Below the pieces are notes generated by a model, which made no database searches, had not been told where the DNA came from, and worked only from the letters and a program-made list of their open reading frames with translations. DNA of 17,032 nucleotides, taken from positions 1-17,032 of the forward strand of contig NW_021825004.1 of NCBI RefSeq assembly GCF_006345805.1, written 5' to 3'. Made by a program: the position numbers and the translations under genes. Positions 426 to 14,152 of this stretch are shown here, in pieces; positions within the stretch are counted from its first letter, which is position 1; the number at the start of each line of letters is the position of its first letter. The stretch comes from Octopus sinensis (taxonomy: Eukaryota).

Positions 426-891
426 TGTAAATTTTACCACACATGCATGCACACAAATAAGGCTCTAGTAAACCTAGTATAGTTTTGAGTTGAACTATGG
501 CATGCATCGAGACACAGAGAAATGAAATATGTTCCATCCAGATACTCATTATACAATGCATAGGGAAATAGCAAGTGATGTTGTACTATGGAAAGTGAAA
601 TAACGTTGATACTGAAAAAGTACTGATAGTGTCATATAGAAGGGACATTTACACAACGCTGGCTGATAATGCTAGAGAATGAATAATGAAATAAAATATA
701 TTGATAATGTTTATACAGCCAATAGAGAAATAACGTGTACATGTAATGCTATAGAATAATTAGTCAAGTAGCGTGTACTACAAATATTTTACAATGATTT
801 ATGATGTAGGGTCAGCAAATATTAATACTATAGCAGAATGAATGCATAGTGAATATTAGTGATATAGCATGTACTATTACGCATAATGTAC

Positions 892-1535
892 AGTGAAACA
901 CTGTGTACTGTCGTACAAGAGACATTGAAATAGTATGTAATGTTATACAATAGACAACGAAATAATGTGTACTGTTTATACAATGGCGAGTGAAATATTG
1001 TGCATTGTTATACATTAGACAATGAAATAGCGTGCACTGTAATACAATGAACAATAAAATAGTGTATACTGTTATACGATAGTGTGTGCTGTTATACAAT
1101 AAACAATGAAATAGTATGTACAGTTATACAATAGTGTGTGCTGTTATACAATTAACAATGAAATAGTATGTCCTGTTATACGATAGTCTGTGAAATAGTG
1201 TGTGCTATTATACAAAAGTGTGTACTGTTATACAATAAACAATGAAATAGTATGTACTGTTATACAATAGTGTGTGCTGTTATACAATAAACAATGAAAT
1301 AGTATGTACCGTTATACGATGGTCTGTAAAATAGTGTGTACTGTTATACAATAGAGAATGACAATGTGTACTGTTATACGATAAAGAATGAAATAATGTG
1401 AATGATTATACGATAGAGAAAAAATAATGTATACTGTTATATGATAGAGAATGAAATAATCTGTACCATTATACAATGGAGAGTGAAATAGCATGCAACC
1501 TTATACAAGAGATAATGAAACATTGTGTACTGATA
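892..1535. repeat. 32-bp minisatellite (consensus ~AATGAAATAGTGTGTACTGTTATACAATAGAC) with 20-bp deletion units; degenerate units extend to ~720 and ~1680
   Basis: About 20 units readable directly, each with a GTGTACTGTTATAC-like core. Confidence 0.93.
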
Positions 1536-1891
1536 TAAAAATAGACTGATGTGTACTGCTATGCAATCTAGCGTGTAATAGCAAATGGTGTTATACAATG
1601 TATTGTAAAATAGTACGTTCTGTTGGTGTAATGTAATGAAAAATTTAAAAGCATGCACTGATGATGTTATACAATGGAAGAGAAGAAACAATATTTACAT
1701 AACATTTGTATTAAAAAATATTTGTACTTTAAGGATGCTTTGTAAGCTCACAAAAGATGAAAGCTTTACATACAGATGACTAATGTGCATTTAAATTTAT
1801 ACAAGCGCACGCACATAAGCATACACATATATTATAAATATATATAACATAGCTACATCTGCACTTTCTTCACACAAACATACATACATGA

Positions 1892-4477: not shown

Positions 4478-4802
4478 GTTGAAATTTACATAAATATGTA
4501 TGTATAGCGTACGTGTGTGCGTGTGTATGCATAATGTATGTATAGAAGAGTATTATGTATTTGAAGAAATGAATAGAAATGACTTTTTTTTTCCACTTTA
4601 GTAATCAGATGTTTATAAGTTTAATTATTGAAGTGAAAAATGTTCAGAAAGGCCATTTCTCATAATTAATATATATATATATACACGTATATACAAACAT
4701 ATGTATGTTTGTGTGTGTGTATGTATATATATATATAGGTATGTATACACACATATATATAAACATATGTAACCATATATATATATATATATATGTATAT
4801 AT

Positions 4803-4944
4803 ATTTATTTTATAGAAGGAGTTTCTACAGGACTAGAACTGTTTCATTCAAATGAAGCTCCTTCTATAAAATAAATTAATTTACTCTGCTATGTATTGAG
4901 TACCTTATTTACTGTGGTTAACCCCGACTCAACCCGGGACCTAC
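4803..4944 (+). mobile_element. Short fold-back retroelement (PLE pseudo-LTR-like), truncated copy of the 13911-14108 family, in (TA)n
   Basis: Near-identical to 13911-13958 and 14018-14108. Inverted arms 4803-4825 and 4854-4876 pair at 22/23 plus one G-T. TA-rich repeats flank both sides. Confidence 0.85.
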
Positions 4945-4945
4945 A

Positions 4946-5037
<92 letters not shown>

Positions 5038-5127
5038 ATATACATATATATGCATACATATATAAATCCATCCATATATATATATATATGTGTGTGTGTG
5101 TATGTGTATGTATGTATGTATGTATGT

Positions 5128-5327
5128 TGGCAAATCAAAGAGGTAAAACAAGCAAAAGTCAATATGACGTACGCAAGAGGTACATTATAGATGGACACTC
5201 GGCGAAAATCTTCGATGGAAAAATGGGTATGGATATGACGTTTCGGGCATGACTCTTCGTCGGAAAGGAGAACAGTGCAGAAAGAACAGTCCAGTAAGGA
5301 ACAGATAGTCTGGATAAAAGCCGGGGA
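5128..5327 (-). mobile_element. Probable decayed PLE-type fragment with a degenerate hammerhead-like motif
   Basis: Minus strand 5268-5237 reads CCTTT CCGACGA AGAGTCATGCCC GAAAC GTC. It is a unique island between microsatellites; helices I and II pair poorly. Confidence 0.35.
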
Positions 5328-5385
5328 ATGCATACATGCATACATACATACATACATACATACATACATACATACATACATACAT

Positions 5386-5456
<71 letters not shown>

Positions 5457-5460
5457 GCAT

Positions 5461-5602
5461 GGGAGGTTTCCTTCAGTTTCCGTTTACCAATCTATTCACA
5501 TGTAAGAGACCCTTGCCCATGGCGTACATAGTGTCACGCAGTGAGACTGAACCTGGAACTGTGTGCTTGGAAGCAAACTTCTTACCATGCAGCCATGTAT
5601 GC

Positions 5603-13867: not shown

Positions 13868-13910
<43 letters not shown>

Positions 13911-13916
<6 letters not shown>

Positions 13917-14105
13917 TATATAGAAGGAGCTTCTACAGGACTAGAACTGTTTCATTCAGAGAAATCTTCAGGAACTTCCTGAAGATTTCTCTTGAATGAA
14001 ACAGTTCTAGTCCTGTAGAAGCTCCTTCTATATAATAAATTAATTTTACTCTGCTATGTATTGAGTACCTTATTTCTGTGGTTAACCCCGAATCAACTCG
14101 GGACC

Positions 14106-14108
<3 letters not shown>
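13911..14108 (+). mobile_element. Fold-back PLE pseudo-LTR-like element in (TA)n containing a 130-bp palindrome
   Basis: Arms 13911-13974 and 13976-14040 are perfectly complementary except for one bulged T (13992). A 68-nt tail follows, ending in hairpin CCCGA-ATCAAC-TCGGG. Pure (TA)n on both sides; second copy at 4803-4944. Confidence 0.85.
13970..14026 (+). ncRNA. Type I hammerhead ribozyme motif with canonical CUGANGA/GAAA core (mirror copy on the minus strand)
   Basis: Helix I AGGAACUUC/GAAGCUCCU (8/9), CUGAAGA 13979-13985, helix II UUC-UCUU-GAA, GAAA 13998-14001, helix III ACAG/CUGU with an 8-nt loop centred on CUAG, triplet GUA, predicted cut 14017/14018. Confidence 0.8.

Positions 14109-14152
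<44 letters not shown>

What the first reader, a model, noticed from the sequence alone, without database searches (positions are those of the whole stretch)
13911..14108. 130-bp near-perfect palindrome built around a canonical-core hammerhead ribozyme with a dimer-competent helix III
Seen in sequence: 64/64 paired arm positions with one bulge, CUGAAGA and GAAAC cores, 8/9 helix I and a GUA triplet. The 16-nt helix III region ACAG-UU-CUAG-UC-CUGU is symmetric about CUAG, so two copies can pair at 12/16 positions. Established: PLE pseudo-LTRs carry minimal type I HHRs with palindromic helix III loops that cleave as dimers, and PLE insertions often have an inverted partial pLTR. Inference: this is a non-autonomous or truncated PLE insertion that could cleave transcripts from either strand. 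Caveat: an RNA spanning both arms would form a long hairpin that competes with the ribozyme fold, and the outer half of helix I comes from the inverted arm.
Basis: partly seen in the sequence, partly recalled or inferred. Interest (0 to 1): 0.85.

Follow-up and report, generated by a model that had tools for sequence, protein, structure and literature searches.

The report
Head-to-head Penelope-like insert with hammerhead-like motif
The 130-bp palindrome is real, but it is the ordinary footprint of a Penelope-like retroelement that inserted two truncated copies head-to-head into a TA repeat. Each copy carries a weak, atypical hammerhead-ribozyme-like motif whose activity is unproven.

Summary
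Positions 13911-14040 form a 130-bp palindrome with one bulge, followed by a 68-nt tail (14041-14108) and flanked on both sides by (TA)n.

It is one copy of a dispersed family. There were 611 first-look candidates in this 2.72-Gb genome, and 40 of 40 scored hits were full length at 91-98% identity. The right arm plus tail is the 3' end of a longer, non-coding element of about 2.2 kb.

The family has constant 3' ends, variable 5' truncation and two alternative 3' ends (short, or long with the 68-nt tail). Every head-to-head pair I examined joins one short and one long copy, always in (TA)n. This matches the published Penelope-like element (PLE) insertion architecture.

The hammerhead core and helices I and III are present, and the motif sits just upstream of the two 3' ends, where PLE hammerheads lie. 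Helix II is weak and lacks the G10.1-C11.1 pair. Rfam gives no hit, and a model built from this genome's true hammerheads scores it at noise level. No compensatory changes were seen.

Earlier notes of this scan (s1-111426, s1-111393) describe the same kind of insert elsewhere in this genome.

Verdict: a new member of a known kind, of modest interest.

The parts
13868..13910 (.). Left (TA)n flank, the target microsatellite
   Evidence: (TRF). In all 30 aligned copies the element is flanked on both sides by TA-rich/(TA)n sequence. A strict script found a pure (TA)n run on both sides in 23 of the 29 copies it could score, with a median of 23 bp on each side.
13911..13974 (-). Left arm: an inverted, 5'-truncated copy. 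Its outer end is the family's 'short' 3' end (...CTTCTATATAATAAAT read on the minus strand).
   Evidence: In 44 loci the inverted partner ends at ref 272-283, with no tail.
13975..13975 (.). Palindrome centre, the junction of the two copies. It lies just 5' of the motif, beside the self-complementary AGCT of the parent element.
   Evidence: the centre varies by indels between copies; most copies turn round at ref 208-212.
13976..14040 (+). Right arm: a 5'-truncated copy of the parent element's 3' region, up to the short 3'-end site
   Evidence: in L041, L053, L055, L057 and L059 the same 65 nt are preceded by about 200 nt of conserved parent sequence instead of an inverted arm.
14041..14108 (+). 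68-nt tail ending ...GGGACCTAC, the 'long' 3' end, present on one side only
   Evidence: In every head-to-head pair one copy has the tail and the other lacks it.
14109..14150 (.). Right (AT)n flank, the target microsatellite
13970..14026 (+). Hammerhead-like motif. Helix I: 13970-13978 with 14018-14026. Core CUGAAGA: 13979-13985. Weak helix II: 13986-13997. GAA: 13998-14000. Helix III: 14001-14016. A17: 14017. Predicted cut: 14017/14018.
   Evidence: Sequence and descriptor hit. No Rfam hammerhead hit at E<=10. Model R1 scores family copies 11-12.6 bits against 75-77 bits for true ones, and this window's copy falls below E=10.

Best explanation
The palindrome is the junction of two 5'-truncated copies of one non-coding, non-autonomous retroelement, inserted head-to-head into a (TA)n microsatellite. 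The mechanism is the one known for Penelope-like elements (PLEs).

Inferred mechanism, from PMC11167929:
- The PLE enzyme cuts both strands of AT-rich DNA and primes reverse transcription on both.
- It starts at either of two internal sites on the RNA.
- One cDNA here started at the 'short' site, giving the left arm. The other started 68 nt further downstream, giving the right arm plus tail.
- Both cDNAs ran only about 65 nt beyond the short site and were then joined.

Shown here: the family, its two 3' ends, the 5' truncation, the pairing of one short with one long copy, and the (TA)n flanks.

Inferred: dependence on a PLE RT/GIY-YIG enzyme.

The hammerhead-like motif lies 23 nt upstream of the short 3' end and 91 nt upstream of the long one. 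PLE hammerheads sit in the same place. I think it is probably a diverged descendant of a PLE hammerhead (about 0.6). Its helix II is degenerate, so efficient self-cleavage is doubtful (about 0.3). In the palindromic copies the 63-bp hairpin would lock the motif away.
For: Family and parent element:
- Dispersed family: 611 first-look candidates, and 40 of 40 scored hits are full length at 91-98% identity.
- In all 30 aligned copies both sides are flanked by TA-rich/(TA)n sequence. A pure (TA)n run on both sides was scored in 23 of 29 copies.
- The right arm plus tail is the 3' end of a longer element.
- That element is about 2.2 kb and non-coding. Its long open frames are TG/TA low-complexity artefacts with no Pfam hit.

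Insertion architecture:
- 3' ends are constant, at q1271 or q1324, while 5' starts range from q4 to q1059.
- About a dozen head-to-head pairs and 44 loci each join one short and one long copy.
- The two arms of a locus shared the subfamily markers I scored in all but 2 of 44 loci.
- A partial tandem with an inverted copy lies at C13:71406839-71410652.
- This architecture is described for PLEs in PMC8557442 (inverted 5'-truncated copy, tail at one end, (TA)n preference) and PMC11167929 (both strands cut and extended, two RT start sites producing the tail, hammerhead just upstream).

PLEs in the same genome:
- PLEs are abundant: 5030 GIY-YIG candidates and an RT-then-GIY-YIG copy in L073.
- True type-I hammerheads are present.
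- Those hammerhead elements also end in (TA)n shortly after the hammerhead.
- A true hammerhead-bearing 394-bp palindrome of the same build is at L019.

The motif itself:
- All core nucleotides are present.
- Helix I has 6-7 bp in the parent, and the three-way junction costs -8.8 kcal/mol against an MFE of -9.0.
- Variants shared by 3 or more of 51 copies fall only at N7, loop 2 and loop 3, and at none of the 33 core or stem positions.
Against: - No autonomous RT + GIY-YIG element sharing this 3' end was found.
- The tail is 68 nt, against the 30-40 nt published.
- At least 40 copies turn round within a few nt of the same point. Independent truncation does not predict that.
- Helix II has a U.U pair where G10.1-C11.1 is expected, plus only 3 weak pairs.
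- There is no Rfam hammerhead hit, and R1 scores 11-12.6 bits, level with random AT-rich hits.
- No compensatory change was seen, because the stems do not vary.
- The shared-variant pattern amounts to only about 3 independent events (p about 0.03).
- The hammerhead fold is not the MFE in a 121-nt context, and the z-score is 0.06.
- No 5' ends were seen at the predicted cut site.
Confidence: 0.75

Rival explanations
1. The insertion is PLE-type, but the hammerhead-like motif is a chance or fully decayed resemblance with no catalytic or structural role.
For: - No Rfam hit.
- R1 gives noise-level scores.
- Helix II lacks G10.1-C11.1, which PMC4209133 lists as highly conserved in PLE hammerheads.
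- The relaxed descriptor predicts roughly 100-400 chance matches genome-wide.
- No covariation was seen.
- The fold is no more stable than shuffles.
- Hammerhead mutants do not impair PLE insertion in vitro (PMC11167929).
Against: - The motif sits exactly where PLE hammerheads sit, just upstream of the two 3' ends. A chance match within a given 100 nt is expected about 5e-6 times.
- Shared variants avoid all 33 core and stem positions.
- It shares CUUC-CUGAAGA ... GUA|GAA with another true hammerhead type of this genome.
Confidence: 0.35
2. It is a MITE or foldback DNA transposon that targets TA dinucleotides, and the palindrome serves as its terminal inverted repeats.
For: - A long perfect inverted repeat, TA-rich flanks, small size and high copy number.
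Against: - The unit is asymmetric: the 68-nt tail is on one side only.
- The arm is the 3' end of a longer element whose copies have variable 5' truncation and a fixed 3' end.
- Turn-round points differ widely between copies, as in L043, L044 and L070.
- No transposase or TSD was seen.
Confidence: 0.04
3. The 198-bp palindromic unit is itself the amplifying template. Under this view it is a SINE-like hairpin RNA copied as a whole, or a 134-nt RNA with a fixed 5' end at the palindrome centre whose palindrome is rebuilt at each insertion. The copies would not be independent truncations of the 2.2-kb parent.
For: - At least 40 copies share the same turn-round point within a few nt, at ref 208-212, at 91-98% identity.
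- Subfamily markers are symmetric in both arms.
- The centre carries small, variable extra nucleotides, as expected where two cDNA ends are joined.
Against: - No promoter or RNA 5' end was demonstrated.
- The runs available were contigs only, so RNA ends cannot be read.
- The recurrent 1-nt deletion in the short arm occurs in several subfamilies, so it does not mark a single master.
Confidence: 0.3
4. The palindrome is a hairpin-RNA or microRNA-type gene.
For: - With relaxed thresholds the hairpin matches several miRNA precursor models at 54 bits.
- The hairpin is very stable, at -116.6 kcal/mol.
Against: - All those matches are far below their gathering scores (54 against 68-119 bits) and reflect only generic long-hairpin shape.
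- The hairpin is a multi-copy transposon by-product.
- There is no evidence of small RNAs.
Confidence: 0.05

Closest known systems
Penelope-like element insertions, including Naiad/Hydra-type elements in (TA)n and their non-autonomous derivatives (Craig et al. 2021, PMC8557442; Frangieh et al. 2024, PMC11167929)
   Same: - Heavy 5' truncation with fixed 3' ends.
- An inverted 5'-truncated copy abutting head-to-head.
- An extra tail at only one end, consistent with two RT start sites.
- Partial tandems.
- Insertion into (TA)n or AT-rich DNA.
- A hammerhead position just upstream of the RT start sites.
   Different: - No ORF: the body is a TG/TA-rich non-coding stretch.
- The tail is 68 nt rather than 30-40 nt.
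- The autonomous partner is not identified.
- Most short copies turn round at one preferred point.
Minimal type-I hammerheads of metazoan PLEs (Cervera and de la Pena 2014, PMC4209133; Rfam RF00163)
   Same: - Type-I topology.
- Full CUGANGA / GAAA / UH core.
- Helix I of 6-7 bp.
- A partly palindromic helix III region that could pair between two copies.
- N7 varies (A/U) between subfamilies.
   Different: - Helix II is U.U plus 3 weak pairs, not 4-8 bp closed by G10.1-C11.1.
- Helix III is 4 bp with an 8-nt loop, not 1-2 bp with a 2-4-nt palindromic loop.
- Covariance-model scores are at noise level.
- The true hammerheads of this same genome all keep G10.1-C11.1.
The hammerhead-bearing 394-bp palindrome at L019:681-1074 in the same genome
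   Same: - Two inverted arms, each with a hammerhead.
- A short 3' end on one side and a longer one on the other.
- (TA)n flanks.
   Different: - Its hammerhead is recognised by the model (30.6 bits) and has a long helix II closed by G-C.
- Its arms are 195 nt.
- I saw no sequence similarity to the family studied here beyond the core and the CUUC/GAA helix I start.

Membership tests
Hammerhead ribozyme, type I (RF00163 / PLE min-HHR) | Invariant core: C3 U4 G5 A6 N7 G8 A9, G12 A13 A14, A15.1-U16.1, H17 not G | tested here: met
   CUGAAGA at 13979-13985, GAAA at 13998-14001, U16.1 at 14016 and A17 at 14017.
Hammerhead ribozyme, type I (RF00163 / PLE min-HHR) | Helices I and III flanking the core | tested here: met
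   Helix I pairs 8 of 9 positions in the window and has 6-7 bp in the parent. Helix III has 4 bp.
Hammerhead ribozyme, type I (RF00163 / PLE min-HHR) | Helix II of 4 bp or more, closed by the conserved G10.1-C11.1 pair (PMC4209133) | tested here: not met
   The helix II stretch is UUUCUCUUGAAU: U.U at the closing position, then U-A, U-A and C-G. The strict descriptor finds nothing in the window.
Hammerhead ribozyme, type I (RF00163 / PLE min-HHR) | Score at or above the gathering threshold of a hammerhead covariance model | tested here: not met
   No Rfam hammerhead hit, even at E<=10 on 251 nt. Model R1, built from this genome's true hammerheads, gives family copies 11-12.6 bits against 75-77 bits for true ones.
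Hammerhead ribozyme, type I (RF00163 / PLE min-HHR) | Compensatory base changes in the helices among relatives | tested here: inconclusive
   Among 51 copies the stems do not vary. Shared variants lie only at N7, loop 2 and loop 3. The copies laid from other runs showed no differences.
Hammerhead ribozyme, type I (RF00163 / PLE min-HHR) | Site-specific self-cleavage | not testable with these tools
   Only assembled contigs were available, so RNA ends cannot be read.
Penelope-like element insertion (non-autonomous) | Fixed 3' ends with variable 5' truncation | tested here: met
   5' starts run from q4 to q1059, and ends fall at q1271 or q1324.
Penelope-like element insertion (non-autonomous) | An inverted 5'-truncated copy adjacent head-to-head | tested here: met
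   44 loci held here plus about a dozen pairs.
Penelope-like element insertion (non-autonomous) | A tail extension at only one end (two RT start sites) | tested here: met
   Every pair joins one copy ending at ref 272-283 and one ending at about ref 345. The length is 68 nt, against 30-40 nt in the literature.
Penelope-like element insertion (non-autonomous) | A preference for AT-rich or (TA)n targets | tested here: met
   All 30 aligned copies are flanked on both sides by TA-rich/(TA)n sequence. A pure (TA)n run on both sides was scored in 23 of 29 copies.
Penelope-like element insertion (non-autonomous) | A 3' end shared with an autonomous element encoding a PLE RT and GIY-YIG endonuclease | tested here: inconclusive
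   No coding similarity in the parent element or in any held locus.
MITE / foldback DNA transposon | Both termini defined by inverted repeats, with a fixed-length TSD | tested here: not met
   The right terminus (the tail) has no inverted counterpart on the left. The arm belongs to a 5'-truncation series.
microRNA precursor families (RF03906, RF03208 and others) | Score at or above the family gathering threshold | tested here: not met
   Scores are 54 bits against thresholds of 68-119 bits, and nothing is reported at gathering level.

The most novel reading that the evidence does not exclude
The motif is a working, compact hammerhead variant: no G10.1-C11.1 pair, and an extended self-complementary helix III that a U-to-A subfamily change raises from 12/16 to 14/16 pairing. 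Together with the two RT start sites 23 and 91 nt downstream, it would form the minimal 134-nt RNA module that a PLE enzyme recognises and copies. That would explain why most short copies begin exactly at the 5' edge of helix I.
Probability: 0.15. Interest if true: 0.55.

Novelty: new member of a known kind. Interest (0 to 1): 0.3.

Why it matters
This explains a striking 130-bp perfect palindrome as a routine product of Penelope-like retrotransposition. That guards against reading such hairpins as new genes or new ribozyme systems. The family is a compact natural example of what may be the minimal PLE template: a hammerhead position, two RT start sites and a tail, with no ORF. It could help experiments on how PLE enzymes choose their RNA and on why hammerheads are kept next to the RT start sites. 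If the weak helix II variant does cleave, it would widen the sequence definition used to search for hammerheads.

Tried and rejected
- Rfam at gathering and at relaxed thresholds gave no hammerhead, only sub-threshold generic hairpin miRNA models.
- Long open frames in the 2.2-kb parent looked like genes. They are TG/TA microsatellite artefacts with no Pfam hits.
- I looked for an autonomous partner. A tail-only genome search returned only family copies.
- The GIY-YIG hit 3.4 kb from L048 belongs to an unrelated RT + GIY-YIG PLE copy separated by other repeats.
- tblastn of that PLE's ORFs against all held loci found nothing.
- A protein database search with its GIY-YIG ORF gave one 134-aa fragment on an 828-nt contig.
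- The sequencing-run search returned only assembled contigs with coded organisms. Laying four of them showed the arm plus tail and the parent form, but no variants and no RNA ends.
- Folding energies do not discriminate: this genome's true hammerheads also have weak z-scores.
- I first read the symmetric variants in both arms as selection for the hairpin. I rejected this, because copying both arms from one template explains them.
- I first read the shared 1-nt bulge as the mark of a single palindromic master. I rejected this, because it recurs in several subfamilies.
- A first random-sequence simulation timed out and was redone.

Full report
**1. The observation**

The window is contig C1475 of a 2.72-Gb eukaryotic assembly. 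It is non-coding and packed with microsatellites. Arms 13911-13958 and 13993-14040 are 100% complementary. The 34 nt between them continue the palindrome, with one extra T and a central C. As RNA the whole stretch is a single 63-bp hairpin of -116.6 kcal/mol.

- CUGAAGA at 13979-13985.
- GAAA at 13998-14001.
- A 4-bp helix III at 14001-16.
- GUA with A17 at 14017.
- Helix I pairing at 8 of 9 positions.

A descriptor relaxed just enough to admit this motif matches 0.02-0.07 times per Mb per strand of random sequence. It is therefore unexpected in one window, but some hundreds of chance matches are expected genome-wide.

**2. It is a repeat family**

The 198-nt stretch 13911-14108 recurs across the genome. 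There were 611 first-look candidates, and 40 of 40 scored hits were full length at 91-98% identity.

An alignment of 30 copies with flanks shows the unit: a 130-bp palindrome plus a 68-nt tail ending ...GGGACCTAC. In every aligned copy the unit sits between TA-rich/(TA)n runs, beyond which the DNA is unrelated. A strict script found pure (TA)n runs on both sides in 23 of the 29 copies it could score, with a median of 23 bp per side. The palindrome centre varies by small indels. Subfamily differences are mirrored in both arms.

**3. The arm is the 3' end of a longer element**

A search with the tail alone, followed by inspection of 20 hits, found two kinds of copy. Some have a single arm preceded by about 200 nt of conserved sequence (L041, L053, L055, L057, L059). 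Others are head-to-head pairs whose turn-round point lies 15 nt (L043, L054, L060) or about 180 nt (L044) further in.

Extending these copies defines a parent of about 2.2 kb. It has a degenerate TG/TA-rich body with small unique islands, a 345-nt unique 3' region (L070:5376-5720) and then (AT)n. Its long open frames are low-complexity artefacts and none has a Pfam domain.

**4. Architecture**

Hits to a 1324-nt piece of the parent begin anywhere from q4 to q1059. They end at one of two points: q1271 (...CTTCTATATAATAAAT, the 'short' end) or q1324 and beyond (the 'long' end, with the 68-nt tail).

About a dozen head-to-head pairs in that list each join one short and one long copy. So do all 44 loci I hold with both copies. 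One locus, C13:71406839-71410652, has an inverted copy, then a short copy, then a long copy in tandem. The two arms of a locus shared the subfamily markers I scored in all but 2 of 44 loci, as expected if both are copied from the same template.

The window's palindrome is thus an extreme case in which both copies are truncated about 65 nt from the short end.

**5. Comparison with what is known**

Craig et al. 2021 (PMC8557442) describe these features for Penelope-like elements (PLEs):
- Heavy 5' truncation and partial tandems.
- An inverted 5'-truncated copy abutting the 5' end.
- A 30-40-bp tail at one end only.
- For Naiads, a preference for (TA)n targets.
- Non-autonomous derivatives that share 3' ends with autonomous families.

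Frangieh et al. 2024 (PMC11167929) show that a PLE enzyme cuts and extends both strands of AT-rich DNA. It starts reverse transcription at two internal RNA sites, and the sequence between them is the tail. The hammerhead lies just upstream.

The family here meets each architectural criterion, except that its tail is 68 nt. The genome is rich in PLEs: there are 5030 GIY-YIG candidates, and L073 carries an RT-then-GIY-YIG copy. It also has true type-I hammerheads (sequences). Those true hammerhead elements also end in (TA)n shortly after the hammerhead. One of them forms a 394-bp palindrome of the same design at L019:681-1074.

I could not find the autonomous partner.

**6. The hammerhead-like motif: points in favour**

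- All invariant core nucleotides are present.
- In the parent, helix I is native (UAGCUUC with GAAGCUC) and does not depend on the inverted arm. The three-way junction costs -8.8 kcal/mol against an MFE of -9.0.
- The cut site lies 23 nt before the short 3' end and 91 nt before the long one, which is the PLE position.
- It shares CUUC-CUGAAGA ... GUA|GAA with another true hammerhead type in this genome.
- Among 51 tail-bearing copies, variants shared by 3 or more copies fall only at N7 (A/U), loop 2 and loop 3. None falls at the 33 core or stem positions, against 12 of 86 positions downstream.
- The loop 3 U-to-A change raises the self-complementarity of the helix III stretch from 12/16 to 14/16.

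**7. The hammerhead-like motif: points against**

- Helix II is U.U plus three weak pairs. PMC4209133 lists G10.1-C11.1 as highly conserved, and every true hammerhead I saw in this genome keeps it.
- Rfam gives no hit even at E<=10.
- A covariance model built from this genome's true hammerheads (A1, R1) scores family copies 11-12.6 bits. That is level with random AT-rich matches, whereas true ones score 75-77 bits. The window's own copy falls below the listing threshold.
- The stems never vary, so there is no covariation.
- The variant pattern reduces to about three independent events (p about 0.03).
- The hammerhead fold is not favoured in a 121-nt context.
- No copy is truncated at the predicted cut site.
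- On the minus strand of this window the motif lacks a usable helix I.
- Any transcript spanning both arms would be locked in the hairpin.

I conclude that the motif is probably a diverged descendant of a PLE hammerhead (about 0.6). Activity is doubtful (about 0.3).

**8. Open point**

At least 40 copies turn round within a few nt of ref 208-212, at a self-complementary AGCT just 5' of helix I. I see two possible causes and could not test either: a short template RNA with a fixed 5' end, or annealing of two identical cDNA ends at a palindromic tetranucleotide. A 1-nt deletion in the T run of loop 2 recurs in the short (inverted) copy of 17 loci across subfamilies. It looks like polymerase slippage rather than shared descent.

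**9. Other data**

Public runs were available only as contigs with coded names. They hold the arm plus tail and the parent form, without sequence differences, and cannot show RNA ends.

Two earlier notes of this scan describe head-to-head PLE inserts in (TA)n in this same genome (s1-111426 and s1-111393). I treated them as leads. My own tests agree on the architecture. I did not test their clade assignment. Their suggestion that the genome is an octopus fits my recollection of the SINE-like sequence in L073, but it is untested.

**10. Verdict**

The PLE reading is supported by architecture, but not yet by linkage to an ORF. The ribozyme reading is plausible as ancestry and unproven as function. 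This is a new member of a known kind, of modest interest.

Noticed in passing
L019:681-1074: A 394-bp palindrome (195-nt arms, 95% complementary). Each arm carries a model-detected hammerhead with a long G-C-closed helix II. It has (TA)n flanks and a longer extension on one side only. It is a bona fide counterpart of the studied structure, from another PLE family.
   Followed up: partly
L036:1498-1980 (G000:C16:25146363-25146839): Two identical minimal hammerheads 431 nt apart on the same strand, within a tandem repeat of about 432 nt flanked by (TA)n and (GA)n. This is a retrozyme-like or pLTR-like tandem.
   Followed up: partly
L017:1983-2074, L015:3073-3164, L064:1034-1126, L071:6073-6164: Further 91-nt hammerheads (CUUC-CUGAAGA, long helix II, GAAAC-ACGU-GUA) lie within 0.2-1.5 kb of family copies. 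Different PLE families seem to pile into the same TA-rich regions. In L064 one abuts a fragment of the studied family's tail.
   Followed up: no
ref 208-212 of L070:5376-5720; window 13970-13980: At least 40 copies turn round within a few nt of the same self-complementary AGCT just 5' of the motif. Long-parent pairs, by contrast, turn round anywhere. This is unexplained.
   Followed up: partly
window 13958-13959 versus 13992 (loop 2 T run): The same 1-nt deletion (TTTCTCTTGAAT to TTTCTCTGAAT) is present in the short, inverted copy of 17 loci from several subfamilies. It is almost never in the long copy. It looks like recurrent, strand-biased slippage.
   Followed up: partly
L041, L055, L070 (after the 3' (AT)n; for example L070:5771-5850): Three copies share conserved sequence beyond the (AT)n (GGGAGA..TTCAC, an A run, ...ACAGATGTATTAGTA). 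Either another repeat is a recurrent target, or a composite unit was duplicated.
   Followed up: no
L073:203-2197 and 4800-5580: A frameshifted PLE copy with RVT_1 followed by a C-terminal GIY-YIG domain. Downstream lie an array of tandem repeats of about 100 nt and a SINE-like sequence ending in (ATG)n, directly abutting (TA)n and a family copy.
   Followed up: partly
window 890-1545: An array of tandem repeats with periods of 32, 52, 84 and 136 nt (a satellite of the ...CTGTTATACAATA... type), unrelated to the finding.
   Followed up: no
L072:3610-5016 and the equivalent stretches of L066-L071: Stop-free frames of 370-470 codons are produced purely by the degenerate (TATG)n/(TGTATA)n sequence in the parent element's body. 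This is a trap for ORF-based annotation.
   Followed up: yes
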